Shown here one piece after another: positions 3,941 through 56,043 of a stretch of DNA of 64,000 nt (position 1 is its first letter; each line of letters starts with the position of its first letter). The DNA lies in the NCBI RefSeq assembly GCF_001194135.2, contig NC_068989.1:56869735-56933734 (forward strand). Reading direction: 5' to 3'. Under the pieces are notes generated by a model, which ran no database searches, was not told the origin of the DNA, and worked only from the letters and a program-made list of their open reading frames with translations. Source of the stretch: Octopus bimaculoides (taxonomy: Eukaryota). A program made the translations under genes and the position numbers.

Positions 3941-4820
3941 CATAGATGTCGCACAGTATACAATATCGCGAGGTTGTTGATTGAAGATATTGTGTCTACC
4001 GGGGGGGGGGGTTGTACTATTTGTCAAGTCACAACAAAGACCTCATACACACAGTACTTTACGCTATATGCGTGCAGTTCCAAGTAATGCCGACTTTTGC
4101 AATACATCTAGATTGTAGGATATCTCTAAGGTTTTCAGATGTTTTTTTCAGATTGGCTGGTATTGATGACAATAGGGATAACCTGTATGTTTGACTCTCG
4201 TAGCTGCCACATCTTAGCGATCTCAATTCTCAGGTCTCCATATTTATCAACCTTTTCTCATTTTTTCATGATGATATCTTGATCTTCTGGCACTGCTACG
4301 TCGATTATTAGGTACTTTTGTTTGACCCTCCTAAAGGTTACTATATCCGGCCATTGGTGCTCGAACACTTTGTCTGACTGGAAATCAAAGTCCCAGAGGA
4401 TTTTTGCCTTACCCTTTTTGTCCATTACATTTTCCGGTGTATGTTGGTACGAAGTACCCGTAACCTCATATCCGTACTTACGGCATAGTAGCCAGTGGAG
4501 GTTTTGGGCTACTTTGTCGTGTCTACGCTTGTACTCTTTCTGCGCAAGACTTTCACAAGCACTTACAATGTGAGTCACACTTTCGACCCTCTTCCCACAC
4601 ATTTTGCAGCGGTCCGATGCACTTGTGTGGTATATATTCTTTTTCACTGTGTTGGTATTCAATGCCTGGTCCTGGGCCGCGATGATTAGGCTTTCAGTAT
4701 TCTTTTTTATGTCACCCTTGTTGAGCCACTTCCATGATGCTTCCTGCTCTTTTAATTTGTTGGTTTCACGGTGGAACTGACCATGTAATTCCATGAGGAG
4801 AAGGGTGTCTTCTCTCTCGT
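3941..4820 (-). mobile_element. R4/Dong-clade non-LTR retrotransposon 3' fragment (CCHC knuckle + restriction-like endonuclease) ending in a (TAA)n tail at 3918-3940
   Basis: ORF 4258-4794: AAQDQAL..CKMCGKRVESVTHIVSAC..RRHDKVA..ILWDFDFQSD..PDIV..IIDVAVP. It continues through frameshifts to LQKSALLGTARI*RKVLCV* (stop 4043-4045), then a short 3' UTR and (TAA)n. Confidence 0.88.
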
Positions 4821-4847
4821 TGACTCTTCTTCTTCTTCTTCTTCGTA

Positions 4848-5035
4848 AGACGGCGAGCTGGCAGATTCGTTAAGCACGCCGGGAAAAATGCTTAGCGGTA
4901 TTTCGTCCATCTTTACGTTCTGAGTTCAAATTCCACCGCGGTCGACTTTGCCTTTTATCCTTTCTGGGTCGATAAATCACTGGGGTCGATGTTATCGACT
5001 CCCCCCTTTCCCCCATATTTCAGGCCTTAGAAAGG
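4848..5035 (+). mobile_element. Family A SINE, near full length
   Basis: ggcgagctggcaga..gttaagcacgccggg..aaatgcttagcggtatttcg..gttctgagttcaaattcc..gtcgactttgcc..ggggtcgat. Confidence 0.85.
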
Positions 5036-5036
5036 A

Positions 5037-5089
<53 letters not shown>

Positions 5090-5467
5090 TTCATATACAC
5101 TCAACAGATTAGACTGTTGGAAAAGAAAAATCCTAATATCAAGTTCCAACAAGTAATTTTAGACGCTAAAAACCCTCCTGTCGGGCTAAAACAAGTAACC
5201 TCCTAAGTATCCTAGCTGTCCCTAATAACACTGTTTTCTGGAGCTGTACTAAACTGGGTTTTAGGCCTATTTCCTCTATCCAGCTGTTCAGGTCTTTAGG
5301 GGGATGGTTCCCAATGCATCTATAACTACTGGAATACATTTTACCTGCACTTTCCATAGTCTTTGTAATTCAATAACTAGCTCCTGGTACTTTGCTACTT
5401 TTTTTCAATACTTCTCATATTAATGTTTTCATCATTTAGGACTGTAAAGTCAATTATCTGGCACTTT

Positions 5468-5516
<49 letters not shown>

Positions 5517-6612
5517 CAAATCAGGCTTTCTAGCTTCTGTTCTCTGTTAGTCTGAATGCTAAAGTCCCACAACATCTTATATTTCTTACTTTCTAGTACT
5601 CTACTAGTTTCATGTTCATACCATTTATCAGTATGTTGAAATCCTAGCTTTTTACATAGCTCCCAGTGGATTACCCTCCCTAGATTGTCGTGTCAGTATG
5701 ATACATTCACTTACTTTATGAGTAACGCTTTTCTCTTTTGATTTGCATAATCTACATTGGGAATCTACTTGATTTTTGTCTATCTTAGCTTTTATCCCAT
5801 TAGTCCTCAATGCTTGATCTTGTGCAGCTACTAACAAACTTTGTGTGTTCCTCTTCAGCTTTCCTTTCTACAACCATAACCATGTCTCACTACTACTATT
5901 TTCTGGAACTATCTTTGGGAATTCACCATGCAATGTCTTCTCCTGCCAGTCCAATTGCTAGAGTCCAATTGCTAGAGTCACAGCAAGACATAGGGAAACC
6001 AAAAACTCAAACTAGGTTTGGGTTTTTGGTTTCTCTGTGTCTTGCTGTGACTCCAGCAGCTTTTAATAAACTTCACTGTTATCTACTTACGTTATATTTA
6101 CTCTAGCTAACTCTACGCGGTCTTCTACTGATATTAACACTCTTCCGATTTCCTTTCTAGGTAGGTATAATCTTGCCACTCCTGCCCTAGTTCTTCTATC
6201 TAGCTTGGCTAATTCAGTTTTTGTATATTGCCCAAATATTTACAGCCTTCACTAGATTCGGACCATTTCGCTTTGAGTTCATTAGCTTTCTCACCATTCT
6301 GATGTACTCCTCAATTTTTATTTTCATTTTTGTAGTTAGTACTCAGTCAGATTCTAATACTCCTAGATACTTACAACTCTCGCCTTCTTTCAATGATTTT
6401 AATGTCCGGCCATCTGGTAATTGGATGCCTTCGCTGTTGACTACTTGTCCCCTTCTCATGACTAATATTGCACTCTTATCTATGCCAAATGTCATGCCTA
6501 TATCTTTGCTGAAAAGTCTTACAGTCTGTATCAAGGAATCTATCTCTTTTTCATTCTTACTAAAATGCTTCAGATCATCCATGTAGAGCAAATGGTTAAT
6601 TTTCCCCTTACT
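5090..6612 (-). mobile_element. Second R4/Dong-clade LINE, 5'-truncated within RT (YMDD) and running to the 3' end, with a (TAA)n tail at ~5035-5089
   Basis: Fragments in order: LLYMDDLKHF..GMTFGIDKSA..KYLGVLES (6343-6591), AAQDQALRTN..CRLC..SVTH (5652-5837), LQKTVLLGTARILRRLL (5166-5357). Multiple stops and frameshifts. Confidence 0.9.
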
Positions 6613-9680: not shown

Positions 9681-9934
9681 TCTTAGATTCCCAAAATATT
9701 ATCAATGCTGTCCCTTCCTCCTCTGACTCAATCATGAAATCAAAACACAATGTTCATACACGCAGGCATTATCACTCATATTCAAAAGTGAAGTCACGTG
9801 GCCTCGTGATTACAGAGTTTGGATCGCGCTCATAAGGTCGTTGATACGACTTTTGGACCGACGAGGCTTGTTTCTTTAGAAAGGCACATATGTTATTCTA
9901 GTCGACTTAACTAAGAATGAATCTTTTCTACTCT

Positions 9935-10572
9935 AGGCACAAGGCCCGAAATTTTTGGGGAGGGGGCCAGTCGATTAGATCGACCCCAAGTACCGGTACT
10001 TAATTTATCGACCCCGAAAGGATGAAAGGCAAAATCGACTTCGGCGGAATTTGAACTCAGAACGTAACGGCAGACGAAATACCGCTAAACATTTCGCCCG
10101 GCGTACTAACGTTTCTTATTTCTTTACTGTCCACAAGGGGCTACACATAGAGGGGACAAACAAGGACAGACAAACGGATTAAATCGATTATATCGACCCC
10201 AGTGCGTAACTGCTACTTATTTAATCGACCCGGAAAGGATGAAAGGCAAAGCCGACCTTGGCAGAATTTGAACTCAGAACGTAGCGGCAGACGAAATACC
10301 GCTAAGCATTTCGCCCGGCGTACTAACATTTCTTATTTCTTTACTGTCCACAAGGGGCTACACATAGAGGGGACAAACAAGGACAGACAAACGGATTAAA
10401 TCGATTATATCGACCCCAGTGCGTAACTGCTACTTATTTAATCGACCCCGAAAGGATGAAAGGCAAAGCCGACCTTGGCGGAATTTGAACTCAGAACGTA
10501 GCGGCAGACGAAATACCGCTAAGCATTTCGCCCGGCGTACTAAGGTTTCTGCCAGCTCACTGCCTTACTTAA
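9935..10572 (-). mobile_element. Head-to-tail trimer of family A SINE with 217 bp period
   Basis: Near-identical ORFs at 10202 and 10419 (offset 217). Two units carry the tail ...gtctgtccttgtttgtcccctctatgtgtagccccttgtggacagtaaagaaat (minus-strand sense). Confidence 0.9.
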
Positions 10573-11719
10573 CTAAAAATGAATGCAATGCCAATGTTAT
10601 GCGACTGTCACATATTAGGCGTTTTACTGAGTCAAGAATGGAAAGAAGTGCCAGAGGCTGCCTATGTCTGCTTGCAGCTTCATAGGTGTCCATAACAATT
10701 AGCGAAAACATGATACATATTACCAAGTCATAACTACTTGCGAAAGACGGCTAATGTTTTTTATTGTTTTACAATTGTGGCAAGTTGAAGTGGATGGTAG
10801 AATTAGTTGAGCACTTTACCCGATGTTCTCATTTTGTCTTCTACCACACCTTGTCCGTTGCAAAATTAATTATATAATATAGTGAAATCTACTTTGCGAT
10901 GATAGAATGAGTAGGGTACCGGACAAAATGTTGGTGGATAGTAGAATTAGTAAAAAAGCTAACCTCATAAAATAGTAAGAAATTTGAAACTTGCAGTCAC
11001 CAGTTGGTCATTGTGCTGCCTTTCATGGAGTCGATAGCGTTGCAAGCAGTCAGGCCAAATCGCTGAATACAAGTCAGACTTAAATATTTAAGGGCATTGT
11101 GTATGTTTCTTTAAGTTCTATATATATCAAATTCTGAAGGCTTTGACTTTGCTTCTCCACCCCGCTGACAGCAGAAGAGCCGGTTAAATATTGGGATTCA
11201 TATAATGAGCCACGGCGCCCCAAAGCAAGGATTTGTATGTTGTTAGAAATTATTATTAGGACGTTGATAACATTTATTTGTCATGCTTTCATTTGCTTTA
11301 ATCGATTACTCCGTTTCTCATAAGATGTTTGGTCTTGTGCCAAACTTAGAAATAATTATTTTTACTCCCAGGAGTGGTACGGACAGAATTAGTAGTCTAC
11401 TACGTGCTAACTAGACACTCCTATTTTATATTGTAGCCTCGAATCCCGATGAAATCGATAAACTCAACCACCAAATCATTAATTCTGTTTTGTTGCTGTT
11501 TGACCTCAGAATCTACCCTGAATTAACAACGTTCCAAGTTCAAACCATGACAACTTTGTCTTATTTTCAGACCTCATATATATAGGGCAACATTACACAC
11601 TATGCATTTCTTGTTTGGTAGGGTAGGCTGTAATTTGAGGAAAATATGATTGCTCTTTCTAGCAGCTCGACCGGTCAAAGCTGACGAGTGGAAAAATGGG
11701 ACAAATGTGTCGGACTATA

Positions 11720-13622: not shown

Positions 13623-14017
13623 GATAGCCGAAAGGTGTTTGCCCATTGTACATGTATAATTCTATTTCATGTTACGTTCGTCCGATAGTCGTGAGGTCCT
13701 TTCTGTTGTTTACTTATTTGTTTTCGTATATGTACATTCGTTTGTCTTGTCCAGTGGCTCAATGCTTTTAACTTGAGTCCATGGCCCAGCCGGTTTCTAG
13801 TAGTATCGGAAATAAATGGCCGAAACTACCTGGACATTCCGGATTTCGACGAGGCAATTGGCTGCGAATGATCTGTGTATCTTGGTTTGTTCTGTTTGTC
13901 GTTGTTGTGCTTTTGTCGTTTTCCTGCATGTTGTTTTGACGGTTTCCGTTTGTTGTGTTTTTTCTCTTCTACCTTTGATTTATCCATGCAACGCTACGTA
14001 CAACTTGTTGTTTGCTT

Positions 14018-14053
<36 letters not shown>

Positions 14054-14383
14054 NNNNNNNNNNNNNNNNNNNNNNNNNNNNNNNNNNNNNNNNNNNNNNN
14101 NNNNNNNNNNNNNNNNNNNNNNNNNNNNNNNNNNNNNNNNNNNNNNNNNNNNNNNNNNNNNNNNNNNNNNNNNNNNNNNNNNNNNNNNNNNNNNNNNNNN
14201 NNNNNNNNNNNNNNNNNNNNNNNNNNNNNNNNNNNNNNNNNNNNNNNNNNNNNNNNNNNNNNNNNNNNNNNNNNNNNNNNNNNNNNNNNNNNNNNNNNNN
14301 NNNNNNNNNNNNNNNNNNNNNNNNNNNNNNNNNNNNNNNNNNNNNNNNNNNNNNNNNNNNNNNNNNNNNNNNNNNNNNNNNNT

Positions 14384-14409
<26 letters not shown>

Positions 14410-21900: not shown

Positions 21901-22339
21901 TACAAGGACTCAAACAAACTAACAACGATTGCTATGCAGTGGGCGGGGAACAAACCCAAAGACACACACAAACACATATGCATGTATATATATATATATA
22001 TATATATATATTTNNNNNNNNNNNNNNNNNNNNNNNNNNNNNNNNNNNNNNNNNNNNNNNNNNNNNNNNNNNNNNNNNNNNNNNNNNNNNNNNNNNNNNN
22101 NNNNNNNNNNNNNNNNNNNNNNNNNNNNNNNNNNNNNNNNNNNNNNNNNNNNNNNNNNNNNNNNNNNNNNNNNNNNNNNNNNNNNNNNNNNNNNNNNNNN
22201 NNNNNNNNNNNNNNNNNNNNNNNNNNNNNNNNNNNNNNNNNNNNTATTATAAGTCGTGTATTAGCGTGTGTATATGTAAATATATAAAAACAAAAAGATA
22301 AAGAGAGCAAAGGTAAGGTTGAAGAATTTTATGGATAGA

Positions 22340-22388: not shown

Positions 22389-23083
22389 AGAAAAAATAAA
22401 GTAATCTATTATTATATCCATAGGCGGATATTTTTAGTATGAAGTGGTAAAGAGTGTGATGTGCTGAAAAAAGAGAGAACAGTACTTGAAGTGTAGTTTC
22501 ATTCCAGTGGTAAATATCCGTGTAGAAATTCGTGCAAATTAATCCTTGTGTGAATAATCCGGAAATTTATTTCCTTTCGATCATTTCACCACACATATAC
22601 CACCAAATCTATTTCTCATATTCTCAATTTAACAAGAACACTACCTACACAAACAGACTACGTCACCTCTTTCAATCCCTTTCCACCGTCTATAAATAGG
22701 CTTGGCAGCATCCAAAAATATGATACTACTAACTACCTTGCCCACCCATCCCTCTCCTTTATCTCTGTTCTTCGTTTATCACTCATACCCCCACCACCTA
22801 TATACTACACACGCATTCCTTCCTACTCACTAGACCTTTTAACCTCATCCCCTATTCCTCCTTCACTCTATATGCTCTTCCCCTCTACCCTGTTAAGACC
22901 AACTGACCATAAATATATCGCTACCATCCTCCACCTCTATATCTTCTCTATCCCCTTCCACATTCTATCGTCTTGACTTGACCTAATTACCGCTAACTTT
23001 TCACTTGACTTGGACATCCTTCAAGTAAACAAGCAAAAATCTATTGCAAGATGAAATATATATACCTCTGCTACCTAAGCTAT

Positions 23084-23773
23084 NNNNNNNNNNNNNNNNN
23101 NNNNNNNNNNNNNNNNNNNNNNNNNNNNNNNNNNNNNNNNNNNNNNNNNNNNNNNNNNNNNNNNNNNNNNNNNNNNNNNNNNNNNNNNNNNNNNNNNNNN
23201 NNNNNNNNNNNNNNNNNNNNNNNNNNNNNNNNNNNNNNNNNNNNNNNNNNNNNNNNNNNNNNNNNNNNNNNNNNNNNNNNNNNNNNNNNNNNNNNNNNNN
23301 NNNNNNNNNNNNNNNNNNNNNNNNNNNNNNNNNNNNNNNNNNNNNNNNNNNNNNNNNNNNNNNNNNNNNNNNNNNNNNNNNNNNNNNNNNNNNNNNNNNN
23401 NNNNNNNNNNNNNNNNNNNNNNNNNNNNNNNNNNNNNNNNNNNNNNNNNNNNNNNNNNNNNNNNNNNNNNNNNNNNNNNNNNNNNNNNNNNNNNNNNNNN
23501 NNNNNNNNNNNNNNNNNNNNNNNNNNNNNNNNNNNNNNNNNNNNNNNNNNNNNNNNNNNNNNNNNNNNNNNNNNNNNNNNNNNNNNNNNNNNNNNNNNNN
23601 NNNNNNNNNNNNNNNNNNNNNNNNNNNNNNNNNNNNNNNNNNNNNNNNNNNNNNNNNNNNNNNNNNNNNNNNNNNNNNNNNNNNNNNNNNNNNNNNNNNN
23701 NNNNNNNNNNNNNNNNNNNNNNNNNNNNNNNNNNNNNNNNNNNNNNNNNNNNNNNNNNNNNNNNNNNNNNNNN
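23084..23773. other. Assembly gap (others at 3648-3724, 14054-14382, 18547-18574, 22014-22244, 50220-50797, 56044-56818, 58322-58331, 59009-59677)
   Basis: N runs, mostly flanked by microsatellites. Confidence 0.99.
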
Positions 23774-23959: not shown

Positions 23960-24028
23960 ATATGTATGAGACAGCGAGCTGGCAGAAACGTGAGCACGCC
24001 GGGCGAAATGCTTAGCGGTATAACGGCT
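23960..24028 (+). mobile_element. Family A SINE head, interrupted by the ORF1-only element
   Basis: agcgagctggcagaaacgtgagcacgccgggcgaaatgcttagcggta; the SINE sequence resumes as cggtatttcggct at 25550-25562. Confidence 0.85.
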
Positions 24029-25549
24029 CTGTGAATTATTGTGAATTATTGTGAATACTGTTGTGTTACTTTGTGAAAACTGTCTCGGTAAATAATTGTG
24101 ATTCTTGTGGAATTATTACGGTTACGTTTCACGCGAGCCGCTGCAATTTTTCCCAGCTATGGCAAGTGGTAGTGTCTCCAGTATGGAGAGCTACGCCAAG
24201 GCCACTGCGGTGAGGAAGCCAGTGCCGCTGGAAACCAAAATTCTGAGGACAGTTGTGTATCGTACACAGGCTGTAGAAACCTGTAAAATTGAAATGGTGA
24301 CGGAAGAGGAAATCGAGGAGTGCCTGGGTGAAATTGTGAATGAAGCCACGTACATCAACAGAGGAAGAAAGTTCGGTACGGTAGAGGTGAGGTTCGCCAC
24401 TATAGAAGAGGCAACCAAGCATGCGACCAACATTTTAAGAAGTGAAAACATAGCATTGCTACCAAGTTATAGAGGAAAAAGAAGTGTGAAAATACGTATT
24501 CCCAGAGTTACACCAGATATTAAACCAGAGTGGTTGGTTGCAACAGTGCTGGCTGCAACCAAGGAGGAGCCGGAATTGGAACCAGTGGCGAAATCAAAAG
24601 TGCGCAAATGGTGGGGATTTGGACACGAAATGTGGCTTTTTGCCACATTCGAGGACATAGAAATAATTCCCTACCAGATAGAAGTGGAGGATGAGAGAAC
24701 GTTAAATGCTGTAGTCGAGAGAAGGAAACCAAATTGCTACATATGCGGGGAAAGAGGTCATATGAAGACCAAATTCCCCCTATATGAGTTCACACAGCCA
24801 CAGCAAGAGAAAGCACAAGCAGAGGAGGAAAACATTGCAGACCACACTGAGGAAATGAAATAGAGACAGAAGTGTGAAACAGAGAAAACAAAGGAGAACG
24901 AAAATGGAGCTACTAACCCTAAAAAGCGAAAGAAAAATAAGTCAAAGGAACGGTCAACAGAAAACAAAAAAGAGATAGAAAAGCCAGAAACTAATAATGT
25001 ACAAAAAGAGGAGGAAAGAACGGATAAAGATGTGAAATACAAGGGGGTTTTGATAAAGTACGAGAATTGCGAGCAGATGGAGAGAAAAGTCGAGAGGTTG
25101 GAGGAAATAATAAGAGTGAAGATGCCAGAGAAATGTGCTGAGAAATGCATTTTGATACATGAGGAAAACTACTGTGAGTACATAAAAGAACTTGGTGAAA
25201 ATATAATAACGAAACGGGTATGGTTGGTGGAGACACCACCCCTAGAACTGATTATTTGCAGTTGATAGGGACGGAAGTAACAATGGTTAATGGGAGAAAG
25301 GTAATGCGAGTGTTTGAATTTTTTGAGTTACAAAACCGTTAAAATGTTTACATGACGTTGAACGTAAAAGTGAAAAACTGGATAAATGTAACCACCCGAC
25401 TTCGGGGATCGAGTGGACATTGCGCCTCATTTTTTTCATTCTTTTATTTTAATTACCCCGATTTTATGTTTGTTGCGTTTTGTACTGTATTTATGTTTTG
25501 TGATGTCTTAAAAATTCTTTGTATAGCCCTTGATGGGTAATAAAGAAAT
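24029..25549 (+). mobile_element. ORF1-only ('half-LINE') non-autonomous retroelement, copy 1
   Basis: Bounded by cggtataacggct (24016-24028) and cggtatttcggct (25550-25562), 11/13 identical. GT-rich 5' UTR, a single ORF, 3' end ...tagcccttgatgggtAATAAAGAAAT. No RT or endonuclease. Confidence 0.75.
24159..25265 (+). pseudogene. LINE ORF1/Gag-like nucleic-acid-binding protein, ~368 codons with one in-frame TAG (24861-24863)
   Basis: Track ORFs 24105-24863 and 25032-25265 are in the same frame and the DNA between them is open after the single stop. Motifs: YINRGRKFGTVEVRF (RRM-like), CYICGERGHMKTKF (knuckle, last Cys to Phe), K/E-rich linker. Confidence 0.8.
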
Positions 25550-25562
25550 CGGTATTTCGGCT

Positions 25563-26545
25563 GTGTGAGTTTGGATTTATTGGTAATTATTATTGGTGTG
25601 CGTCTGTATAGTAAGTGCAAGTTTCTATTGACTGCTTTTGTGTTATTTCCTGTTATGATTATTGTTCCTGTGATAATTATTTGTGTGATAGTCTTCGTTC
25701 GAAAACTATCGTGTGTTTTCCCTTGTGGGGGAAACATTAATTGCTGGCAAGATGCTGAAAAGTGTAACTTCGTCCGGCGAAGAGTCGCCAACTGACAGGG
25801 CGGCAAAAAAGAGTGAAAGTTTAATATTTGGCGATATTTCGGATTCTTCTGAAAGTGAATTTCCCCAACCATCAATGTGTAATAATGACGTGTAAAGCCT
25901 TCAAACAGAAGAAAATAAACAAAAAAAAAGTTTTGCGTCGGCGGCTGGAGATGGAACCCGCCAGCTGTCGATAAACAAAAATGACCTGATAAAGAACAAA
26001 GATATGATAACAATTGAAGACGGTGTTGTGAAAGTTCAAGCCCCGGAAGAACTATTAATGTTAGAAAAAAGAAAAACAATTATTTTAAAATCTTACTGTC
26101 TAAAAGGAAAAAAATTGATCGAGTGAGTGAAGAGAAAGTTGAGAAGTGCTTGAAACCCATCTGGCAGGATGGGTTCCCTAGCTAGAGGGAAGAAGTTTGA
26201 TACTATCGAAGTACGACTTGAAGATATAGTAACTGCACAAATGCACTCCGTTAAATCTTTAGAAACGGAGGACGTTGTTTTAATTCCAATATATATGAGA
26301 ATGAAGACGCCAAAGATACGTATACCAAGGGTACCACCTCAAGTCGACCCTATGAAGTTGATGGCGGCAGTCCTGGCAAAAAAGGAAGATAATATAACAC
26401 TCCCTCACGCTACCGTCACAGAAAAGGTTTATTGGACTAGTCAAACGGTTCACCTTCTAATACAAACAGAACAGTCAATCTTAGAACAATTACCGGAGAA
26501 AATAGAAATTGGGGAGGAATTCCTTAACGTATTCGTCACGTGCCC
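25563..26545 (+). mobile_element. ORF1-only element, copy 2 (diverged, disrupted, 3' end lost)
   Basis: Frames 25713-25895, ~25896-26125 (KSFASAAGDG..VVKVQAPEEL..KTIILKSY) and 26169-26549 (ARGKKFDTIEVRL..KIRIPRVPP) align to copies 1 and 3. It is cut just before the zinc knuckle. Confidence 0.7.
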
Positions 26546-26878
26546 CTGAGCAAATATGGTGTACTCAGCTGTGCTCCATAGTAATGTCTGCGATGGCGTT
26601 GCTACAGAGAGGGACAGTCGCTGCAGCAGTCACTCCACCTCGCGGTGATCATTTCTGTGACGGGCGGCTGTTATCCCTGTTTTGTGAAGGAAATCGGTAG
26701 AACGGGGTCCGAGAACACCAGGCGTCACGACGGCGACCAGAACAAACAGATATTGGCCGGTAAGGCCCCTGTGTTTATTGATTTTTCTCTCCTCTGCGTT
26801 ACGGGCGGTGACAACCGGATTTGCAGCCGATGGAGCTCGGTTGGAGCAAATTTAAACAGCATCTTCTTCCAAAGATGC
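26545..26878 (-). mobile_element. CRE-like RLE non-LTR retrotransposon C-terminal fragment (not in the ORF track)
   Basis: Manual minus-strand translation: PVVTARNAEERKINKHRGLTGQYLFVLVAVVTPGVLGPRSTDFLHK..DHREVE*LLQRLSLSV. This resembles the AE..K..KY..F.p.avET.G..G..QRLS C-terminus of CRE-type RLE proteins. Confidence 0.7.
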
Positions 26879-30145: not shown

Positions 30146-32530
30146 TTTCTCCTTTTAATTATTTTATTTAACAATCAATTTCTTTTATTCACCCTACCTC
30201 TTCCATTAAAAAAAAATTATATACTCGATATATTTTCTTCTTAGGCTCTGCTTTTAGGAACTCAGTGTTCTTCCTTTTTCTTGTACATGTGGTTTCGACT
30301 TCTTGTAACGGTATTGAAATCTGAAAAGTGTCATATAGCTAATCTATCGGTATTCCTACTCTTGTTGGTTCCTTTTCTATGACTCTTTCCTTAAGCTGAT
30401 TTCTATATCTCCTTTCCATTCCATTTCTGCTTCTTACACCATACATAATTCTTTTTGTGTGTTACAATTTCTCCTTCCCTGTATTGCTTACCATTTCTGT
30501 ACATTTTTCATATACCTTATCACCGATTCTAAAAAGATTTGGCATGTCTTTACTAACACGTAGTTTTTTCTTCACTGGTAACGGTTTTATCGAATACAGA
30601 CTTCATCTTTCTGGCAAGCATTAATTCTGCTGGTGAACTTCCTTCTGGTGCATTTGGGTTTGGAGTAACTCTGTATACCCTTAAGAATTGTTGGATCGTG
30701 ACCTCGACAGTGGCTTCCTTATTAGCTTTCTTTAAAGCTCTCTTAAAAGTGTCCATGAACCATTTAGCTCTTTACATTCGATCTAGGGTGATACAGTGCT
30801 ATAGCTTTATGTTCTACCGTGAAAATCTCACAGAATCTTTTAAACTCACAGGATACAAACTGTGTTCCGTTATCAGAGACAATTATATCCAGTACACCAA
30901 ATCTTTTGTGTAGCTGTTCATAACTATTAAGTAATAATATCCATTTACCGGGCCTGCAAAATCGATATGCAATTAGGACCATGGTATTTTCACTTCCGGT
31001 CAAGGTTCCCATTTTGTAGTAGGTAGTTTCGCTGCCAGCGCACATCCTCAGCAGCCTTTTACCAGTTTTCAACTACCTTGTCCATGCTTGGCCAGTATAT
31101 GAAACCTCGCATCAGCGCTTTCACTCTAGAGATGCCTGGGTGTCCCACATGGAACTCTTTTAGCATTCTCTTTTCTAATGTCTGTGGTATGACCACCCTC
31201 TGAGCGTCCATTAGTACACCGTCACATATAGAGTACACACTCACATCTTTGCATCAGACCTTCATTTATTTCCTTTTGTCGACTACAGTTTTCTTCTTGT
31301 CTCATTAATACGTCGGCAATAATGTCCTTGATGTATGAGCTATGGCCCGTCTGCCATCGTTATCCTTGTATAGGAGCACGGCTCCTATCTCATCCTCGCT
31401 AGCATCTATAGCTAGTATTATCTTTAACTTTGGGTCGAAATGCGTAAGACACAAGTCTGAAGTTAACACATCTTTTAACTCGTTAAATGCTTTCTGGCAT
31501 GTCTCTGTCCAAACCCATTAGGCATTTTTTTTTTAGTAATTCATTAAGTGGTGCCTTTACTTTATGTATATTTGGGATATACACTTGGTAATAATTTACC
31601 AAGCCTAGGAATGCTTGTAGCATTGTCCCGTTCGTCGGGAGTGGCATATTTCGTATTACCGTCGCCCTTGGTGGGTCCGGTCTGCGTCCACTTTCGCCGA
31701 TTACTTGACTTAGGTATTTTATTTTTGCCACAAAAAATTCACATTTTTCTTCTGTCAATTTTAGCCCGTATTCACTTATTCTCTCGAATACTTTCTTTAT
31801 GTGTTCAACGTGTTGCACTCGAGACTCGCTACTTATCAAAGTGTCATCGAAGTATGCGATGGCAAAGTCACAATCCCTTAATATCGCATCCATTATTTGT
31901 TGGAATATGGTGGGTGCCACTTTTACTCCAAACGGCAATCGTTTGAACGTGTACAATCCACGGTGCATATTGATTGTTAGTAGATGTGTGCAATCTTCCT
32001 CTAAGTGAATTCGAAGGCACGCCTCTGAGAGGTCTAATTTCGAGAAAATTTTCCCTCCGTTTAGTTTAGCAAATACATTTTCTGGGCTTGGTAGTGGGTA
32101 ATTGTGTGTGAGTAAACAGTCGTTTAATCCGATTGAGAAGTCTGCGCACACTCTTAGCTTTTTTTTCTTTACGTAGACCACTGATGCAGCGCAGTGTACA
32201 TGGTCAATCTTTTCAATTCAGGTTTTCCAACCTTTCTAGTCTTTATTGACCTAGTCAACCGCCGCAAACGGCCCGTTCCGTTTGGGCCTGAAAATAGGTG
32301 TTGAATTTTCTTTGATAGCAATCTTTGCTTTTGTTTTTCTGCAACAATCTCAACCTTCGGAAAAAAATTTGGGGAAATTTTCTTTCATTTTTGTCTCAGT
32401 TCATCAACCTCATTCGATCGTTTGGCTGTTCCGTTTATGCTATTGCCCAAAACGCTTATGGGTGTATTCCATAAATTAAATTTCTCCATAAATTCGGTGC
32501 CAAATAAATTCATGGATTTTTTTCAACACA
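30146..32530 (-). mobile_element. Degraded Ty3/Gypsy pol (RT, RNase H remnant, integrase)
   Basis: RT: LRVCADFS..FSKLDLS..RLPFG..IAYFDD..KYL (31483-32181). Integrase: HVGHPGISRVK..YWPSMD (31059-31244), IVSDNGTQF (30764-31072), YRVTPN..SPAELM (30553-30756). Confidence 0.92.
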
Positions 32531-44511: not shown

Positions 44512-44770
44512 GTATGTATGTATGTATGTATCAACAGAGGTGTCATCTACGAACAGAATAGGATCGAAGGAGTACAAGAAAAAATGAGCTGCGCAAGTCC
44601 AGAGCCAACTTCTTGCCTTCATTTTCAGCACACCACCTGTACCCGATCTGCGGCAGAAACTTCCCAGCTATAGCCGTACACACCATAATCCATCTTCTCC
44701 CATGTGATGTCCTTTATATTTCTAATGTTTTATCTATCTATCTATATATACGTGTAGTGTAACGTAGTTA

Positions 44771-44925
44771 CTCGTCGCCAATTGTAGTATCGCTACTATT
44801 CATGACGATACTTGTTTACACTATAACCATAGAGTAACAATAAAATATATAAGGAAGCAGAGTAACAACAACGTAACAATCCAACAAACTCTCTACGAAC
44901 TATACACGAACCAACAAACGTGAAA
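44771..44925 (-). mobile_element. Partial Gypsy LTR plus PBS, duplicate of 45855-46010
   Basis: About 150 bp direct repeat of the LTR 3' portion, ending CTACA-AT-TGGCGACGAG on the minus strand. Confidence 0.75.
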
Positions 44926-44999
44926 TTTTTGATGTTTTTCTTAACGTAGGTTTCCCAAATCTTATCCACATGTCGGTATTAATAATAGAGATGTCGCTC

Positions 45000-45790
45000 C
45001 CAGTATCTAGCTGTTTTTTAATATTCACTTAATTTTACATGTACAAATTTCCTCTTTTTTGTGTCGCTTCTAATGTACGTTGAGAAAACTTCAGAATTTT
45101 TCATGTTCGACCTTCCTAACTTTGCTCTGCGATGTGAGCTCTTGTGTCCTACTTTTTGGCAACTGTAACATTTTTGCATTTTGAAACAACAATCCTTTCT
45201 GAAATGTAGGGCTCCATATTGGTAGCATGAGTTTGGTCTTAACATTTTTCTTTTGTTTATATCCCCTTGTACAAAAAAAAAGGAGGCACTTAAACGTATC
45301 GGGATTAGTTCCTTCAGTTTAAACCTTTACGGTCCCGGCATACGTGACAAAATCTTCCTTTCTTTTAACTAGATTTCAACACTCCCATCGAGTGTTAAAT
45401 AGGTAATATTTTTGATAGTAGTTCGACTGTTTTCTGGAAACAAATTTCACTATTTTTTTGGTAGTATGAAATAATATTTTTCATGTTCAGCCGGCGCTAA
45501 TTTATGTAATAATAGTCTTACCTTTTCGTTGTCCGTCCACGACTTGCAATATTCCATGAAGAATTCTTCGTACCTTGTTAAAGTACGCTGCAAACGTTAT
45601 ACCCTCTTCTAGGTCATAAGTGAATTCTGTTATAGAGTTCGATACGCCATCTGGCGAAAACGAAATTACAGTGTTTCTTAAGACATAGTTCCATTAATTG
45701 TTGTTGTTTTTCTTGTTGCTGAAGTCGTTTCTGCAACTCCTGCTGCTGTTCTTGCAACAGTTTTGCAACTGTATTATAGAAGCTAATAGG
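45000..45790 (-). mobile_element. Degraded Ty3/Gypsy gag
   Basis: VSNSITEFTYDLEEGITFAAYF..SWTDNEKVRLLL..PAEHE.., then two knuckles CYQYGALHFRKDC (degenerate) and CYSCQKVGHKSSH (45018-45245). Confidence 0.8.
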
Positions 45791-46061
45791 TCTTCCATCA
45801 TTAACAGCTTTGTATCACAAAAATTTGTTAACTGACCTGCGTGAGTTTCAAATGCTCATCGCCAATTATTGTAGTATCTCCACTATTCATGACGATACTT
45901 GTTTACACCAATACCATATAGTAACAATAAAATATATAACGAAGCAGAGTAACAACAACGTAATAATCCAACAAACACTTCACAAACTATACACGAACCA
46001 ACATACAATATTCCGACAAACTGCCAAAACGACACCCCACGACTTCCTGCGATCGACTCTA

Positions 46062-47734
46062 ATTTCTTTATTTGGCACATGCGACCACAACACAGAGGAG
46101 GACACTACAAGGATAGACGCAACAATACAGCACGTGGGGTACAAAGAAAGAATGATGAATGAAATGAATTACTTGCAATGAGGTGATGAAATGGCATACG
46201 AGTCCCCCAAAACTCGCAGTTTCATTTTACAGTTCTCTCATACAGTTAATGATCGTTTTTTCCCTTTAACAATTGTAAGTGGCCACAGCTCCTCTGCCGT
46301 TACTACACTTGGCAGGATGTCGTAGCCCACGTATAATCAACTTATTTGAAACTTGTCCGGGTGTATCTGTTGCAGTCTATGCATCACATGCTCTTCTACC
46401 AATATGGCTTTCTTTTTTTCTTCAAACGTTTCAGGGTCCAGTTTAAGTCTTACTAATCCTTTTATTCTTGCAATCATCTTTTCCAACTCTAAATCCTTGT
46501 CGTAAAAATTCACTGTTCTGATATTTTTATAATCAACTCTTCCAATTACCTTTCCTTCCATCCTTGCTCTTGTCTGCTCGTCTATTATCTTGTTCGACCA
46601 TTTCCTCCGCTTTTCCTTTCTTTTCACTTTTTCGTGCTCTGTATCTTGGGTTCGATTCTCAACTTCGTCTTTTTCGGTTTCCATTTCCTTCTCTGTCTTT
46701 TTTTCCTCCTCTCTTTTTTGGGAGGTTCTTTGGCGGCGATTCAGTCCGCATACGCTTTCTATCTGTTTCTTGAGAAATTTTCTCGCACTCCACAGTTTCC
46801 ACCTGCTTTTTCTCAACCTCCTTTTGTACGCCTTCCACCATCTCTTCACAGACCTCTATTTCTTCCACTTGTACTTCTCTGCGGGGGCACACCGCCTGCA
46901 TGTGTCCCCTACTTTTACACTTATAACAGATTGGTGGTCTTCCCTCCACCACAACTCTCAGTCGTGCTCCGTCAGGGAGCTCTACCTCCTCTGCTATGTT
47001 GTGTAGATCTGGTAAGGTTATGTGTACGAGTGCATCTATACCAAATCCCCACCAGTTGATCTCTCTCGATTTTTCTACTTTTAAAACCTCCACTTCGTTG
47101 CAGTTATGAATAACGGCTGTAACCAGCCATTTCAGATCTATTTCGGGAGGTGCTCGTCCAATTCTCACACGTGCAGCTCTTCTTCCACAATAGGTAGGTA
47201 AAAGGGCCCACCTAGCCATTCTTAAGGGTACAGTGGAGTGCTTTTTCGCCTCTTCCTCACTCGTAAATCGCACCTCTACCGTACCGAACTTTCTACCACG
47301 TACGTAGAATGTTGTTAATTGCTTGACGTCGTTTAGGTACTGCTCCAATTCGTCCGTCTCAGCCACTTCTATTTTCTTTGTTTCAACGTTAAGCGTTCTG
47401 TATGTTATTATTTTTCTCTCGGCTCGCTCGAAAACTTCCTTCGGCGGTGTTAATTTTAAAACATCACCTTGCTTCTTGAATAATTTCTTGTATTTCTCTA
47501 ATTTTGTTTTATCCACGTGTATCTCTTGCATTTCCATTGCATTGGCAGACAAGTTTCTACTTGTTGCCGCAGCATACGTTGTTTCTTCCATACCCGATAT
47601 GGGTAGGAAAACAATTTTCAACAATAAATATTAACGATAATATTTACACAACAATTCTTAAAACAATTTCAACAGAACGCAAATCAGACAAACTCATCGC
47701 GTTGAACGCTTTCTTTAACCCAAAATCACAACAC
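46062..47734 (-). mobile_element. ORF1-only ('half-LINE') non-autonomous retroelement, copy 3, 1673 bp
   Basis: TSD cctgcgatcgactcta (46046-46061) and cttgcgatcaactcta (47735-47750), 14/16 identical. Single ORF; 3' end ...gtgccaAATAAAGAAAT. No RT or endonuclease. Confidence 0.82.
46337..47591 (-). pseudogene. LINE ORF1/Gag-like protein, ~418 aa with one frameshift near 46700
   Basis: MEETTYAAAT..FYVRGRKFGTVEVRF..RVRIGRAPP..VVVEGRPPICYKCKSRGHMQAVC (intact CCHC), continuing in ORF 46337-46849 (K/E linker plus C-terminal domain). Confidence 0.85.
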
Positions 47735-48712
47735 CTTGCGATCAACTCTACCTGTCTCTCACTCACATCGCAACTATTTATAGTCATTCGGTCGAATCTA
47801 TTGTCGCAGGAGGCGACGTGACGCTCGCCACAACAACATGTATATCTATCTATCTATCTACCGATACGTGCATACATATATGAAGGGAGAGAAAGAGATA
47901 GGTGTGTGTATTTGTATGTATGTACATATGTATATGTATGTGTGTGTATATATGTATGTATAAGTATATGTATATGTAGTTAGCGCCACCAAGCCAGTAG
48001 TACATGTCTTTCAACTCTGATGCATCTCCCACACAAACAAAGTTTACACCTATCAAACCTACAAATCATTAACTCGATCTCCTGCTTAGTTCCGTTCATG
48101 GTATGCAAGCAGTCTAGATTCAATATATAAATTGATAATTCTAACATCACGTCGATTCCATGCAATTCCAGTTTCCCTTGATACCATATAATGCTTCTAG
48201 CAAAGGACTATCGAATCTATATATATACACACATATGTGTATTTACTGGCCTTCTTTTTTAGAAATGAATAATATTATTTAAAGTACATCTTTGACTAGG
48301 AGGTATCTACACTCCTACAAAATATCTGGAAGAACTCAAGAAAAAAGAAACTAGTTTTATAAATCGTATGGCCTTAAAATCTCACTACTCCCTAATTGCA
48401 GTCATGCCCTATTGTCTCTTACCTCCCTAAGATGGCATGCTACTTAACATAAACATATTGATAAACTTGTTTGTATTCATATATATATATATATATATAT
48501 ACACATCAGTGTTGTGTGTGTGTGTGTTTGTACGTGTGAATGAATGCTTGTATATATGTTTTTAAGTATATACGAGCATTGCCACTACATTCAGTGTGGT
48601 TAATATATTGATGACGATATAAATTTAATGCTGTATCAGTTGCATATATCAAGTTATATATATGTGTGTGTATGTACTATATTCATATATGCATATGTAT
48701 ATTTATACCCCA

Positions 48713-50180: not shown

Positions 50181-50219
<39 letters not shown>

Positions 50220-50797: not shown

Positions 50798-50925
50798 TAT
50801 AAAGGGCTTCTTTTAGTTACCATCTACCAAATATGCTCACAAGGCTTTGGTCGGCCCGAAACTATAGTAGAAGACACTTGCCCCTCGTGCCACTCAGTGG
50901 GACTGAACCTGGAACCGCGTAGCTT
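50798..50925 (-). mobile_element. Family D tRNA-derived SINE
   Basis: Reverse complement of the copy at 52520-52690. Confidence 0.7.
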
Positions 50926-55975: not shown

Positions 55976-56008
55976 TACACACACTTATCACATTTATATA
56001 CACTCGAT

Positions 56009-56043
<35 letters not shown>

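What the first reader, a model, noticed from the sequence alone, without database searches (positions are those of the whole stretch)
10118..10388. A SINE subfamily shares its 3' tail with the ORF1-only elements
Seen: the SINE tail at 10118-10171 and 10335-10388 (plus strand atttctttactgtccacaaggggctacacatagaggggacaaacaaggacagac) aligns along its length with the 3' end of copy 3 at 46062-46118 (atttctttatttggcacatgcgaccacaacacagaggaggacactacaaggatagac). Its last ~30 nt (sense tgtgtagccccttgtggacagtaaagaaat) match the end of copy 1 (tgtatagcccttgatgggtaataaagaaat). Established: SINEs of the stringent type share 3' ends with the partner LINE whose RT recognises them. Inference: SINE, half-LINE and an unseen autonomous LINE form a three-member system competing for one ORF2p. 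No LINE with this tail is present in the window.
Basis: partly seen in the sequence, partly recalled or inferred. Interest (0 to 1): 0.78.

Follow-up and report, generated by a model that had tools for sequence, protein, structure and literature searches.

The report
Octopus SINE, half-LINE and LINE share tail
A short octopus repeat and two "ORF1-only" elements really do end in the same ~55-base sequence, and related octopus genomes hold the complete jumping gene (LINE) that owns this tail, which makes this a well-documented but ordinary LINE/parasite partnership.

Summary
I scanned the SINE variant tail (10335-10388 and 10118-10171, minus strand) against both strands of the window. Its two best non-self hits are the 3' ends of ORF1-only copy 3 (46062) and copy 1 (25549), both end-anchored on TAAAGAAAT and above all background.

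The predicted partner LINE exists. Octopus vulgaris and O. sinensis chromosomes carry 5.3-5.6 kb LINEs with a homologous ORF1 (32-37% identity). ORF2 has an APE endonuclease, a reverse transcriptase and zf-RVT. The 3' end is the reciprocal best match of the SINE variant tail.

The ORF1-only elements are deletion derivatives with their own LINE-type 3' UTR. Copy 3 is 1672 bp and flanked by a 16/17-bp target-site duplication. Their tails are not secondary SINE insertions.

The main qualification concerns the SINE. In this window the variant tail never ends an insertion. It sits at the two internal junctions of a three-unit head-to-tail SINE array (9923-10566). That array has one 18-bp duplication and ends in the ordinary SINE tail. 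The other SINE copies read through their 3' ends all carry the ordinary tail, which is unrelated to the LINE. A mobile "SINE subfamily" is therefore unproven; a one-off template-switch chimera fits equally well.

Head-to-tail joining recurs in the LINE, the ORF1-only pair and the SINE array.

Verdict: a new member of a known kind, of moderate interest.

The parts
9923..10566 (-). Composite SINE insertion made of three head-to-tail units. Units 1 and 2 are 98% identical and each ends in the LINE-type variant tail. Unit 3 is about 89% identical to them and ends in the canonical-type SINE tail.
   Evidence: Self-BLAST gives period ~215, 93.7%; SINE BLAST; alignment of 12 SINE copies; sequence.
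10335..10396 (-). Variant (LINE-derived) tail, copy A, 62 nt: ATCCGTTTGTCTGTCCTTGTTTGTCCCCTCTATGTGTAGCCCCTTGTGGACAGTAAAGAAAT. It is followed by AAGAAAT and then SINE position ~26 of unit 2.
10118..10179 (-). Variant tail, copy B, identical in sequence to copy A. It is followed by AAGAAAC and then SINE position ~26 of unit 3.
9905..9922 (.). Target-site duplication of the whole SINE array, 3'-side copy (ACTTAACTAAGAATGAAT).
   Evidence: Read; matches 10567-10584 at 17/18.
10567..10584 (.). Target-site duplication of the whole SINE array, 5'-side copy (ACTTAACTAAAAATGAAT).
   Evidence: Read.
23969..24021 (+). 53 nt of SINE head (SINE positions 11-63, 90.6% identical to array unit 1), fused directly to the 5' end of ORF1-only copy 1.
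24022..25549 (+). ORF1-only element copy 1. It has a 5' UTR, an ORF at 24159-25266 with a single in-frame TAG at 24861-24863, a 283-nt 3' UTR, and a tail ending ...TGTATAGCCCTTGATGGGTAATAAAGAAAT.
   Evidence: The 3' UTR is homologous to the O. sinensis LINE 3' UTR (60.5 against a shuffle maximum of 41.5).
25550..26560 (+). ORF1-only element copy 2, joined head-to-tail to copy 1. It starts CGGTATTTCGG (SINE positions 57-66). An ORF1 remnant lies at 25938-26519, and the element is truncated or decayed after that, so its 3' end was not found.
46062..47733 (-). ORF1-only element copy 3, 1672 bp. The ORF runs 47624-46659 (321 aa) and, after one frameshift, continues 46849-46337. A 275-nt 3' UTR ends ...GTCTATCCTTGTAGTGTCCTCCTCTGTGTTGTGGTCGCATGTGCCAAATAAAGAAAT.
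47734..47750 (.). Target-site duplication of copy 3, 5'-side copy (minus-strand sense TAGAGTTGATCGCAAGG).
   Evidence: Read.
46046..46061 (.). Target-site duplication of copy 3, 3'-side copy (TAGAGTCGATCGCAGG). It differs from the 5' copy by one mismatch and one indel.
   Evidence: Read.

Best explanation
The window is from an octopus, most likely Octopus bimaculoides. It contains three kinds of retroposed sequence that end in the 3' terminus of one LINE family. This LINE has two ORFs and an APE-type endonuclease and looks L1/Tx1-like. ORF1p has RRM-like folds and one CCHC knuckle. ORF2p has endonuclease, RT and zf-RVT domains. The element is 5.3-5.6 kb long and has no long poly(A). It ends in a conserved ~30-55-nt block (..TGTCCCCTCTnTGT..GCCC(C)TTGTGG..) followed by a short A-rich terminus (TAAAGAAAT or AAATAAAATAAAA).

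1. The ORF1-only elements are ORF2-deletion derivatives of this family, analogous to HAL1. They keep a 5' UTR, ORF1 and the LINE 3' UTR. They are inserted by target-primed reverse transcription, presumably with ORF2p supplied in trans by autonomous relatives. Copy 3 has a 16/17-bp target-site duplication.

2. The SINE variant tail is the last ~62 nt of such a LINE-family RNA, joined to the body of the common tRNA-like octopus SINE at about position 187 in place of the SINE's own unrelated tail. This is a tail swap, most simply produced by RT template switching.

3. The same machinery tends to join units head-to-tail. It produced arrays of full-length LINEs in O. vulgaris, the copy 1-copy 2 pair, the SINE head fused to copy 1, and the SINE array here.

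Shown: homology of tails, ORF1 and 3' UTRs; the target-site duplications; the anatomy of the arrays.

Inferred: that ORF2p recognises the tail; that mobilisation is in trans; that template switching is the joining mechanism.
For: Tail homology inside the window:
- The top two non-self hits of the SINE variant tail are the 3' ends of copy 3 (38) and copy 1 (31); background is at most 25.

The partner LINE:
- L003 (O. vulgaris) has ORF1 of 503 aa and ORF2 of 1132 aa with Exo_endo_phos, RVT_1 and zf-RVT.
- L002 (O. sinensis) has ORF1 of 615 aa followed by frameshifted EN and RT with YADD.
- Human L1 ORF2p is the best solved-structure match.

Reciprocal best tail matches between LINE and SINE:
- SINE tail against L003: 52.5 and 47.5, next best 26. 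LINE tail against the window: 53.5 twice, then copy 3 at 35, then background at most 31.
- L002 tail against the window: SINE tails 44.5, copy 1 at 42, background 33.

ORF1 homology:
- tblastn and blastp give 32-38% identity with E-values from 1e-30 to 1e-52 among the four lineages.
- The last ~34 nt are nevertheless 74-94% identical in aligned columns. This argues for constraint on the terminus.

3' UTR homology beyond the tail:
- Scores exceed the shuffle maxima: 60.5 against 41.5, 57.5 against 36.5, 40 against 35.5.

Target-site duplications:
- Copy 3 has 16/17 bp. The SINE array has 17/18 over 18 bp.

Absence of ORF2 in the window, and a genuine tail swap:
- No ORF2 homologue is in the window.
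- The canonical SINE tail does not match the LINE tails, so the variant tail is a real swap.

Head-to-tail joining:
- LINE units have a 5277-bp period and are 98.3-99.6% identical, with the 3' end abutting the next 5' end.
- Copy 1 abuts copy 2. The SINE units abut one another.

ORF1 in a LINE context elsewhere:
- Two further contigs (L001, L004) show an ORF1 homologue followed by the start of an ORF2 (M..CLNVKGL and M..SINVRGL).

Literature:
- A 2026 repeat annotation lists 13 recently active L1-Tx1 families in O. vulgaris, with a mean insertion length of about 5.4 kb (PMC13282606). That length is consistent with this LINE.
Against: - The autonomous LINEs were found in O. vulgaris and O. sinensis, not in the genome the window comes from. 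No ORF2 fragment lies in the window.
- The LINE ORF1s are only 32-37% identical to the ORF1-only proteins, so the exact parent subfamilies are unseen.
- The variant-tailed SINE occurs at one locus only. There the tail is internal and the insertion ends in the canonical tail. No insertion event primed on the variant tail of a SINE has therefore been observed.
- No significant or conserved stem-loop is present in the tails (z-scores -0.7 to -2.0; a 2-bp consensus at -1.08 kcal/mol).
- If the LINE is L1/Tx1-like it may use a relaxed, A-rich-tail recognition mode. In that case the shared tail reflects descent rather than necessity.
- The assignment to L1/Tx1 rests on domain content and literature statistics, not on a phylogeny.
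Confidence: 0.8

Rival explanations
1. There is a true variant-tailed SINE subfamily. A master SINE carrying the LINE tail is transcribed and repeatedly mobilised through that tail. The array arose when such a SINE inserted into the AGAAAC site near the 5' end of an older canonical SINE. Its 5' junction was resolved by homology, and one 217-bp unit was later duplicated.
For: - Units 1 and 2 differ from unit 3 by about 11% but from each other by 2%. This fits a younger element nested in an older one, followed by a recent duplication.
- The junction TAAAGAAAT/AAGAAAC-GTTAG shows microhomology between the tail end and the SINE's CAGAAAC. That is expected if the RNA 3' end anneals to the nicked target.
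- The terminal motif is conserved across deep lineages, which suggests it is functional.
Against: - There is only one locus in 64 kb, while the window holds about ten other SINE copies and every one whose 3' end is readable carries the canonical tail.
- No variant tail is adjacent to a target-site duplication.
- No further copy was found in the 36 kb of O. sinensis and O. vulgaris DNA examined.
Confidence: 0.4
2. The SINE array is a one-off mosaic cDNA. During a single target-primed reverse transcription primed on a canonical SINE RNA, the RT jumped to the 3' end of a LINE or ORF1-only RNA and copied about 62 nt. It then jumped back to a SINE RNA at about position 187. A later unequal crossover duplicated the unit. 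On this view no variant-tailed SINE lineage exists.
For: - One target-site duplication surrounds the whole array, and the 3'-terminal unit has the canonical tail.
- Other template-switch-like chimeras lie nearby: the SINE head (positions 11-63) fused to the 5' end of copy 1, and copy 1 abutting copy 2.
- LINE units are concatenated in O. vulgaris.
Against: - It needs two jumps plus a duplication.
- The canonical SINE's partner RT would have to be the one that jumps onto a LINE RNA from another family.
- Units 1 and 2 carry several private substitutions relative to unit 3, which fits separate source RNAs as well.
Confidence: 0.4
3. The head-to-tail arrangements reflect repeated insertion into a preferred target at the element's own end, or ordinary tandem duplication and unequal crossing-over. 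They say nothing about the RT. In that case the shared tail is only common descent plus a recombination accident.
For: - Double insertions at one site are a documented route to tandem TE dimers and satellites (bioRxiv 10.1101/158386, listed).
- The LINE units are 98-99.6% identical, and SINE units 1 and 2 are 98% identical. Both figures are compatible with DNA-level duplication.
Against: - The LINE unit junctions differ in the length and sequence of their A-rich termini (AAATAAAATAAAA-CACTGATA against AATAATAAAAAA-CACCCGAT), although the unit bodies are more than 99% identical. This looks like separate reverse-transcription events.
- Three unrelated RNAs (LINE, ORF1-only, SINE) all show the same kind of junction.
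Confidence: 0.25
4. The tails of the ORF1 elements are secondary insertions of variant-tailed SINE fragments.
For: The tail similarity itself, and the SINE-derived sequences that flank copy 1 on both sides.
Against: - Copy 3's target-site duplication brackets the whole 1672-bp element, tail included.
- No duplication flanks the 55-nt tails themselves.
- The 3' UTRs of copies 1 and 3 are homologous to each other and to the LINE 3' UTRs well upstream of the region shared with the SINE.
- Full-length LINEs carry the same tail with no SINE body attached.
Confidence: 0.03

Closest known systems
SINE/LINE pairs with a common 3' tail (Ohshima & Okada model; tRNA-derived SINEs whose tails derive from a partner LINE)
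   Same: About 62 nt at the 3' side of a tRNA-like SINE body are homologous to the 3' end of an autonomous LINE. The insertions have 16-18-bp target-site duplications and no long poly(A).
   Different: The LINE-type tail is seen at one locus only, and there it is internal to a SINE array. The abundant SINE copies use another, unrelated tail. Recognition of the tail is untested, and no conserved stem-loop was detected.
HAL1 (half-L1) of mammals: non-autonomous L1 derivatives that encode only ORF1p (PMC5753468)
   Same: The elements retain a 5' UTR, an ORF1 homologous to that of an autonomous LINE, and the LINE 3' UTR and tail. They lack ORF2. Several deeply diverged lineages exist; HAL1 likewise arose repeatedly.
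   Different: The host is a mollusc and the LINE family is different, with a type-I-like ORF1p (RRM-like folds plus a CCHC knuckle) rather than the coiled-coil, RRM and CTD arrangement. The 3' end is a defined motif with a short A-rich terminus rather than poly(A). One copy carries a SINE head at its 5' end.
Internally deleted non-autonomous LINE derivatives (SIDEs of R2/R1; PMC3414825, listed)
   Same: They are deletion derivatives that keep the ends needed for target-primed reverse transcription and depend on the full-length element.
   Different: SIDEs are short and non-coding and derive from site-specific RLE-type elements. Here ORF1 is retained, and two of the copies are almost intact.
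L1-Tx1-type LINEs annotated as recently active in Octopus vulgaris (PMC13282606)
   Same: APE endonuclease, RT and a C-terminal zf-RVT motif; two ORFs; about 5.3 kb, close to the mean of about 5.4 kb for the 421 recent L1-Tx1 insertions reported; young copies that are 98-99.6% identical.
   Different: Whether the LINE in L003 is one of those 13 families was not checked. That paper does not mention ORF1, tails or SINE partners (0 occurrences of 'ORF1').
U6/L1-type chimeric retrocopies and end-to-end template jumping by LINE RTs (from general knowledge)
   Same: The junctions are the 5' end of one RNA joined to another RNA: a SINE head on copy 1, tail-to-head joins, and a SINE body joined to a LINE tail.
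   Different: The mechanism is not demonstrated here. Some of the junctions could equally be nested insertions or DNA-level duplications.

Membership tests
SINE with a LINE-derived 3' tail (SINE/LINE partner pair) | The 3' region of the SINE is homologous to the 3' end of an autonomous LINE. | tested here: met
   Reciprocal best matches: SINE tail against L003 scores 52.5 and 47.5 with 26 next; LINE tail against the window scores 53.5 twice. The same holds for L002.
SINE with a LINE-derived 3' tail (SINE/LINE partner pair) | The tail lies at the 3' terminus of dispersed insertions, each next to its own target-site duplication. | tested here: not met
   There is only one locus. Both tail copies are internal junctions, and the array ends in the canonical tail with a single 18-bp duplication. 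A genome-wide test was not possible with these tools.
SINE with a LINE-derived 3' tail (SINE/LINE partner pair) | The head derives from a small RNA and carries an internal pol III promoter. | tested here: inconclusive
   Box-B-like GAGTTCAAATTCC and a tRNA-like head can be seen by eye. ARAGORN and Rfam at gathering threshold report nothing.
SINE with a LINE-derived 3' tail (SINE/LINE partner pair) | The partner RT recognises and needs the tail (stringent type), typically through a stem-loop. | tested here: inconclusive
   No significant fold was found, and only a 2-bp consensus hairpin appears. The terminal ~34 nt are 74-94% identical across lineages whose ORF1 is 32-38% identical, which suggests constraint. 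A functional test cannot be run here.
HAL1-like ORF1-only non-autonomous LINE derivative | Encodes a homologue of the ORF1p of an autonomous LINE. | tested here: met
   tblastn and blastp E-values from 1e-30 to 1e-52 against the ORF1 of the L002 and L003 LINEs.
HAL1-like ORF1-only non-autonomous LINE derivative | Lacks ORF2 within the boundaries of the retroposed unit. | tested here: met
   Copy 3 is 1672 bp between its target-site duplications. In copy 1, only 283 nt separate the ORF1 stop from the tail. The window has no tblastn hit to ORF2.
HAL1-like ORF1-only non-autonomous LINE derivative | Shares the 3' UTR and terminus with the autonomous LINE. | tested here: met
   3' UTR alignments exceed all or nearly all shuffles; tail scans.
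HAL1-like ORF1-only non-autonomous LINE derivative | Propagates as an ORF1-only lineage, with many copies sharing the same deletion. | tested here: inconclusive
   Two copies with 38-44% amino-acid identity share the architecture, and their 3' UTRs are homologous (57.5 against a shuffle maximum of 36.5). O. bimaculoides has at least 6 annotated protein fragments of the family. Genomic copies outside the window could not be fetched.
L1/Tx1-group LINE (classification of the partner) | ORF2 with an N-terminal APE endonuclease, an RT, and a C-terminal CCHC (zf-RVT) motif. | tested here: met
   Pfam hits Exo_endo_phos 10-228, RVT_1 512-753 and zf-RVT 972-1024. The best PDB match is human L1 ORF2p, E 5.5e-16.
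L1/Tx1-group LINE (classification of the partner) | Phylogenetic placement of the RT domain inside the L1 or Tx1 clade. | not tested
   No reference RT set was available. Named homologues are teleost, plant and fungal RT proteins at 23-32% identity, which is compatible but not decisive.
Retrozyme or Penelope-like tandem element with a hammerhead ribozyme (considered because of the tandem units) | A hammerhead ribozyme motif in the repeat unit. | tested here: not met
   The Rfam scan of the whole window at gathering threshold returned no match of any kind.

The most novel reading that the evidence does not exclude
The window may capture a SINE changing LINE partners. On this reading, this LINE family's RT habitually jumps end-to-end between templates. 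That habit would produce LINE concatemers and ORF1-only concatemers. It would also fuse the abundant octopus SINE to LINE-family RNAs at both ends: a SINE body with a LINE tail, and a SINE pol III head on a whole ORF1-only element. If the fused forms are themselves transcribed and mobile, there would be a three-tier parasitic network (LINE, protein-coding half-LINE, SINE). There would also be a new chimeric element type, a SINE-headed ORF1-coding retroposon.
Probability: 0.15. Interest if true: 0.6.

Novelty: new member of a known kind. Interest (0 to 1): 0.4.

Why it matters
SINEs and LINEs make up about a quarter of octopus genomes, and their activity has been linked, speculatively, to cephalopod neural evolution. 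Published searches for competent octopus LINEs reported only RTE and Dong elements (PMC9115989).

This analysis shows an intact two-ORF LINE in O. vulgaris. It ties that LINE by sequence to two classes of dependants: ORF1-only "half-LINEs", a type best known from mammals as HAL1, and a tail-swapped SINE.

That provides concrete partner assignments and a defined ~30-55-nt candidate recognition element. It also provides natural chimeras that can be used to test how SINEs acquire or exchange LINE tails. The principle itself is textbook.

Tried and rejected
1. **Retrozyme, Penelope or hammerhead idea for the tandem units.** Rfam found nothing in the window, so I dropped it.
2. **tRNA detection in the SINE head.** ARAGORN found none.
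3. **LTR-like reading of the tail-plus-head junctions** (AATAAA as an R-region signal, a TATA box upstream of copy 3). I rejected this because the 16/17-nt repeat brackets copy 3 as a target-site duplication. The sequence downstream is a separate gag/protease-type fragment.
4. **A conserved stem-loop in the tails.** Single folds are not significant, and the alignment fold gives only 2 bp.
5. **Canonical SINE tail derived from the same LINE.** Its scores are at background, so this is rejected.
6. **Shared 5' UTR sequence among copies 1, 2, 3 and the flank of copy 3.** Only borderline similarity was found.
7. **Other TAAAGAAAT sites** (2297, 16912, 60809, 61431). Their contexts are unrelated and no ORF1 lies upstream.
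8. **Fetching genomic copies of O. bimaculoides family members.** Eight of twelve look-ups returned nothing.
9. **Metagenome scan with the degenerate tail motif.** It gave 0 hits.
10. **RT domains in long profile-search hits.** None of the 10 tested has one. This is uninformative, because ORF1 and ORF2 are separate reading frames.
11. **Fold search of the ORF1p model** (pLDDT 58). It gave only weak tandem-RRM matches, with best E 2.3e-3.
12. **Identifying the source samples** SRR11869391 and ERZ25513664 in the literature. Nothing was found.
Full report
**Source of the window**

The window is a draft eukaryotic assembly with N gaps and many microsatellites. The ORF1-like proteins it encodes find their nearest database relatives only in Octopus bimaculoides, at up to 90% identity. 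It is therefore octopus DNA, most likely O. bimaculoides.

**Check of the observation**

I scanned the 54-nt SINE variant tail (sense = minus strand, 10335-10388) against about 6000 90-nt windows on both strands.
- The best hits outside the array are the 3' end of ORF1 element copy 3 (score 38) and the 3' end of copy 1 (score 31).
- The best unrelated window scores 25, and the 99th percentile is 20.
- Both alignments run to the last base of the elements, ...TAAAGAAAT.

The similarity is real and position-specific. Copies 1 and 3 resemble each other less than each resembles the SINE tail. This fits a family of diverged tails.

**Anatomy of the SINE locus**

BLAST with the SINE unit finds about ten further copies or fragments of this tRNA-like SINE in the window. 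Where these can be read through the 3' end, homology to the variant unit stops near position 180-187. From there they continue into a different, canonical tail (...CCCCGAAATTGCTGGCCTTGTGCCAAAATTTGAAACCAATAT). The variant tail exists only at 9923-10566.

That locus is one composite insertion on the minus strand:
- Unit 1 has a full head and body followed by the 62-nt variant tail.
- AAGAAAT follows, and then unit 2 runs from SINE position ~26 through its body and a second variant tail.
- AAGAAAC follows, and then unit 3 runs from position ~26 through its body and a canonical-type tail.

Units 1 and 2 are 98% identical, and unit 3 is about 89% identical to them. One 18-bp target-site duplication (9905-9922 and 10567-10584, 17/18 identical) brackets the whole array.

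In this window the "SINE tail" is therefore never the 3' end of an insertion. No simple duplication flanks the 62-nt segment either, so it is not a plain nested insertion of a LINE fragment.

**Anatomy of the ORF1-only elements**

- **Copy 3** occupies 47733-46062 (minus strand) and is 1672 bp long.
  - It is flanked by TAGAGTTGATCGCAAGG and TAGAGTCGATCGCAGG.
  - A 16-17-nt repeat sitting exactly at the 3' end and within the expected 5' zone has a chance probability of about 1e-5 by my estimate. I take it as a target-site duplication.
  - The ORF is 321 aa and continues after one frameshift for another 170 aa.
- **Copy 1** (24022-25549, plus strand) has one ORF at 24159-25266 interrupted by a single in-frame TAG. 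A related database protein, P0006, reads through that position.
- **Shared architecture.** The proteins of copies 1 and 3 are 38-44% identical. Both have a weak zf-CCHC hit and a C-terminal domain also present in P0002. A pLDDT-58 model gives only weak tandem-RRM matches.
- **Ends.** In both elements a 3' UTR of about 280 nt follows the stop codon and ends in the tail. No ORF2 is present: tblastn with an intact octopus ORF2 finds nothing in the window.
- **Junctions of copy 1.** Copy 1 is preceded directly by 53 nt of SINE head (positions 11-63, 90.6% identical to array unit 1). It is followed directly by copy 2. Copy 2 starts with CGGTATTTCGG (SINE positions 57-66), carries an ORF1 remnant at 25938-26519, and is then truncated.

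**Search for the partner LINE**

A profile of the ORF1 proteins found 797 relatives among 1.84 billion representative proteins. Looking up the contigs that encode four of them gave four loci.

- **L002, O. sinensis chromosome CM016872.1**:
  - ORF1 of 615 aa, 35.6% identical to copy 3 with E 7e-50.
  - A start of ORF2 reading MANLRIGCLNVRGL.
  - An Exo_endo_phos domain, an RT with YADD, and zf-RVT, all broken by frameshifts.
  - A 232-nt 3' UTR.
  - The element sits in an (ATT)n microsatellite and ends ...TCGTCCTGTTTTGTCCCTTTATG...TGTGTCAGCCCTTGTGGCCAATAAAAAGAAT.
- **L003, O. vulgaris chromosome OX597840.1**:
  - At least three head-to-tail LINE units with a 5277-bp period, 98.3-99.6% identical.
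  - The first unit is intact, with ORF1 of 503 aa and ORF2 of 1132 aa (Exo_endo_phos 10-228, RVT_1 512-753, zf-RVT 972-1024).
  - Each unit ends ...GTTGTATTGTCCCCTCTTTGTTGGCCCCTTGTGGGTAAATAAAATAAAA (or ..GGGTAATAATAAAAAA). The next unit's 5' end follows immediately.
- **L001 and L004** are short contigs from unidentified samples. Each shows an ORF1 homologue followed by the first codons of an APE-type ORF2.

**Tail comparison with the LINEs**

I used a scoring scheme that tolerates the 14-nt indel between subfamilies.
- The SINE variant tail's best hits in L003 are the two LINE 3' ends (52.5 and 47.5; next 26).
- The L003 LINE tail's best hits in the 64-kb window are the two SINE array tails (53.5 each). 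Copy 3's tail follows at 35, with background at 31 or below.
- For L002, the SINE tail's top hit is the LINE end (43.5 against 31). The LINE tail's top window hits are the SINE tails (44.5) and copy 1's tail (42), with background at 33.
- The whole 3' UTRs of the LINEs and the ORF1-only elements align better than all or nearly all shuffles.
- The canonical SINE tail does not match the LINE tails.

The four ORF1 lineages (two LINEs, copy 1, copy 3) are mutually only 32-38% identical in protein. Yet the last ~34 nt are 74-94% identical in aligned columns. I read this as constraint on the terminus.

**Interpretation**

- The ORF1-only elements are best described as HAL1-like ORF2-deletion derivatives of this LINE family. 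HAL1 is a non-autonomous L1 derivative that encodes only ORF1p and arose several times (PMC5753468).
- The variant SINE tail is a LINE-family 3' end grafted onto the common SINE body in place of its own tail.

What is not established is that a variant-tailed SINE lineage is itself mobile. The single locus can be explained in two ways that I rate about equally:
- a variant-tailed SINE inserted into the AGAAAC site of an older canonical SINE, and one unit was later duplicated; or
- a single mosaic cDNA was made by template switching, and one unit was later duplicated.

The recognition mode (stringent or relaxed) and competition for ORF2p are also untested. The folds give no convincing stem-loop.

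Head-to-tail joining occurs in all three components:
- LINE concatemers in O. vulgaris, whose junctions differ in their A-rich termini although the unit bodies are more than 99% identical;
- the copy 1-copy 2 pair;
- the SINE head fused to copy 1;
- the SINE array.

End-to-end template jumping by the RT is the most economical common cause, but this is inference. Repeated insertion at one site (bioRxiv 10.1101/158386) and unequal crossing-over remain alternatives.

**Comparison with what is known**

Sharing of tails between SINEs and LINEs, and ORF1-only LINE derivatives, are both established phenomena.
- For octopus, the paper on competent LINEs reports only RTE and Dong elements, and no assembled full-length LINE in O. 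bimaculoides (PMC9115989).
- A 2026 annotation lists 13 recently active L1-Tx1 families in O. vulgaris averaging about 5.4 kb per insertion. It does not discuss ORF1, tails or partners (PMC13282606).
- The LINE found here fits the L1-Tx1 label in three ways. Its domains match. Its nearest solved structure is human L1 ORF2p. Its named homologues are teleost, plant and fungal RTs. I did not run a phylogeny.

**Verdict**

It is a new member of a known kind, with interest of about 0.4. The most novel reading still open is a SINE caught switching LINE partners through a template-jumping RT, together with a SINE-headed ORF1-coding chimera as a mobile form. I give that reading about 15%.

Noticed in passing
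window 23969-24021 (+) joined to 24022-25549: ORF1-only copy 1 carries 53 nt of SINE head (positions 11-63) fused directly to its 5' end. Copy 2 begins with SINE positions 57-66 (CGGTATTTCGG) immediately after copy 1's tail. The head is closest to unit 1 of the SINE array (48/53). This could be a 5' template-switch chimera, or a SINE-headed half-LINE lineage.
   Followed up: partly
L003 1-13026 (O. vulgaris OX597840.1:31866384-31879409): A head-to-tail array of at least three full-length, nearly identical LINE units with a 5277-bp period. One unit has intact ORF1 and ORF2, so it is a candidate active autonomous LINE.
   Followed up: partly
L002 8001-14928 (O. sinensis CM016872.1): The annotated 623-aa 'gene' P0008 is the LINE ORF1 spliced onto downstream sequence. 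The tool reports that the locus does not translate to the query. This is probably a gene-model artefact caused by a transposable element.
   Followed up: no
window 3960-5950 (-): Two consecutive fragments of another LINE's ORF2 C-terminus, each ending in an (AAT/TAA)n tail. The first is the ORF at 4258-4794, with a weak zf-RVT hit (E 4e-5) and RHD/PD..D-like motifs. The second is a decayed copy at about 5950-5100. A canonical SINE copy (4845-5028, + strand) lies between them. They look like Dong/R4-type elements.
   Followed up: no
window 44760-46045 (-): Immediately downstream of copy 3 lies a decayed LTR-retroelement-like gag/protease fragment, with a CCHC knuckle (CYSCQKVGHKSSH) and a DTGS protease motif. 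It contains a 150-bp internal direct repeat (44771-44919 against 45855-46006, 88.8% identical). Copy 3 appears to have inserted into its 5' region.
   Followed up: partly
window 31483-32181 (-): A fragment of an LTR-retrotransposon reverse transcriptase (RVT_1, E 9.5e-28).
   Followed up: no
window 59690-59972 (+): An ORF that emerges from an N gap encodes C2H2 zinc-finger-like repeats (..CGVCQRVCKSNGGLKRHVRIH.., ..CNLCGCFFKTLSGLKSHIRRH). It may be an exon of one of the expanded octopus ZNF genes.
   Followed up: no
window 13900-14400, 22000-22250, 23050-23770, 50200-50800, 56000-56800, 59000-59680: Runs of N (assembly gaps), typically bordered by (TA)n, (TATC)n or (CA)n microsatellites. Elements that abut these gaps cannot be delimited.
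   Followed up: no
L001 1857-1930 and L004 2105-2209: Contigs from unidentified samples (Logan SRR11869391 and ENA ERZ25513664) carry ORF1 homologues followed by ORF2 starts (MSICLGCLNVKGLRS.. and MALLKVGSINVRGLGS..). The LINE family therefore extends beyond the three Octopus species, in hosts not identified here.
   Followed up: no
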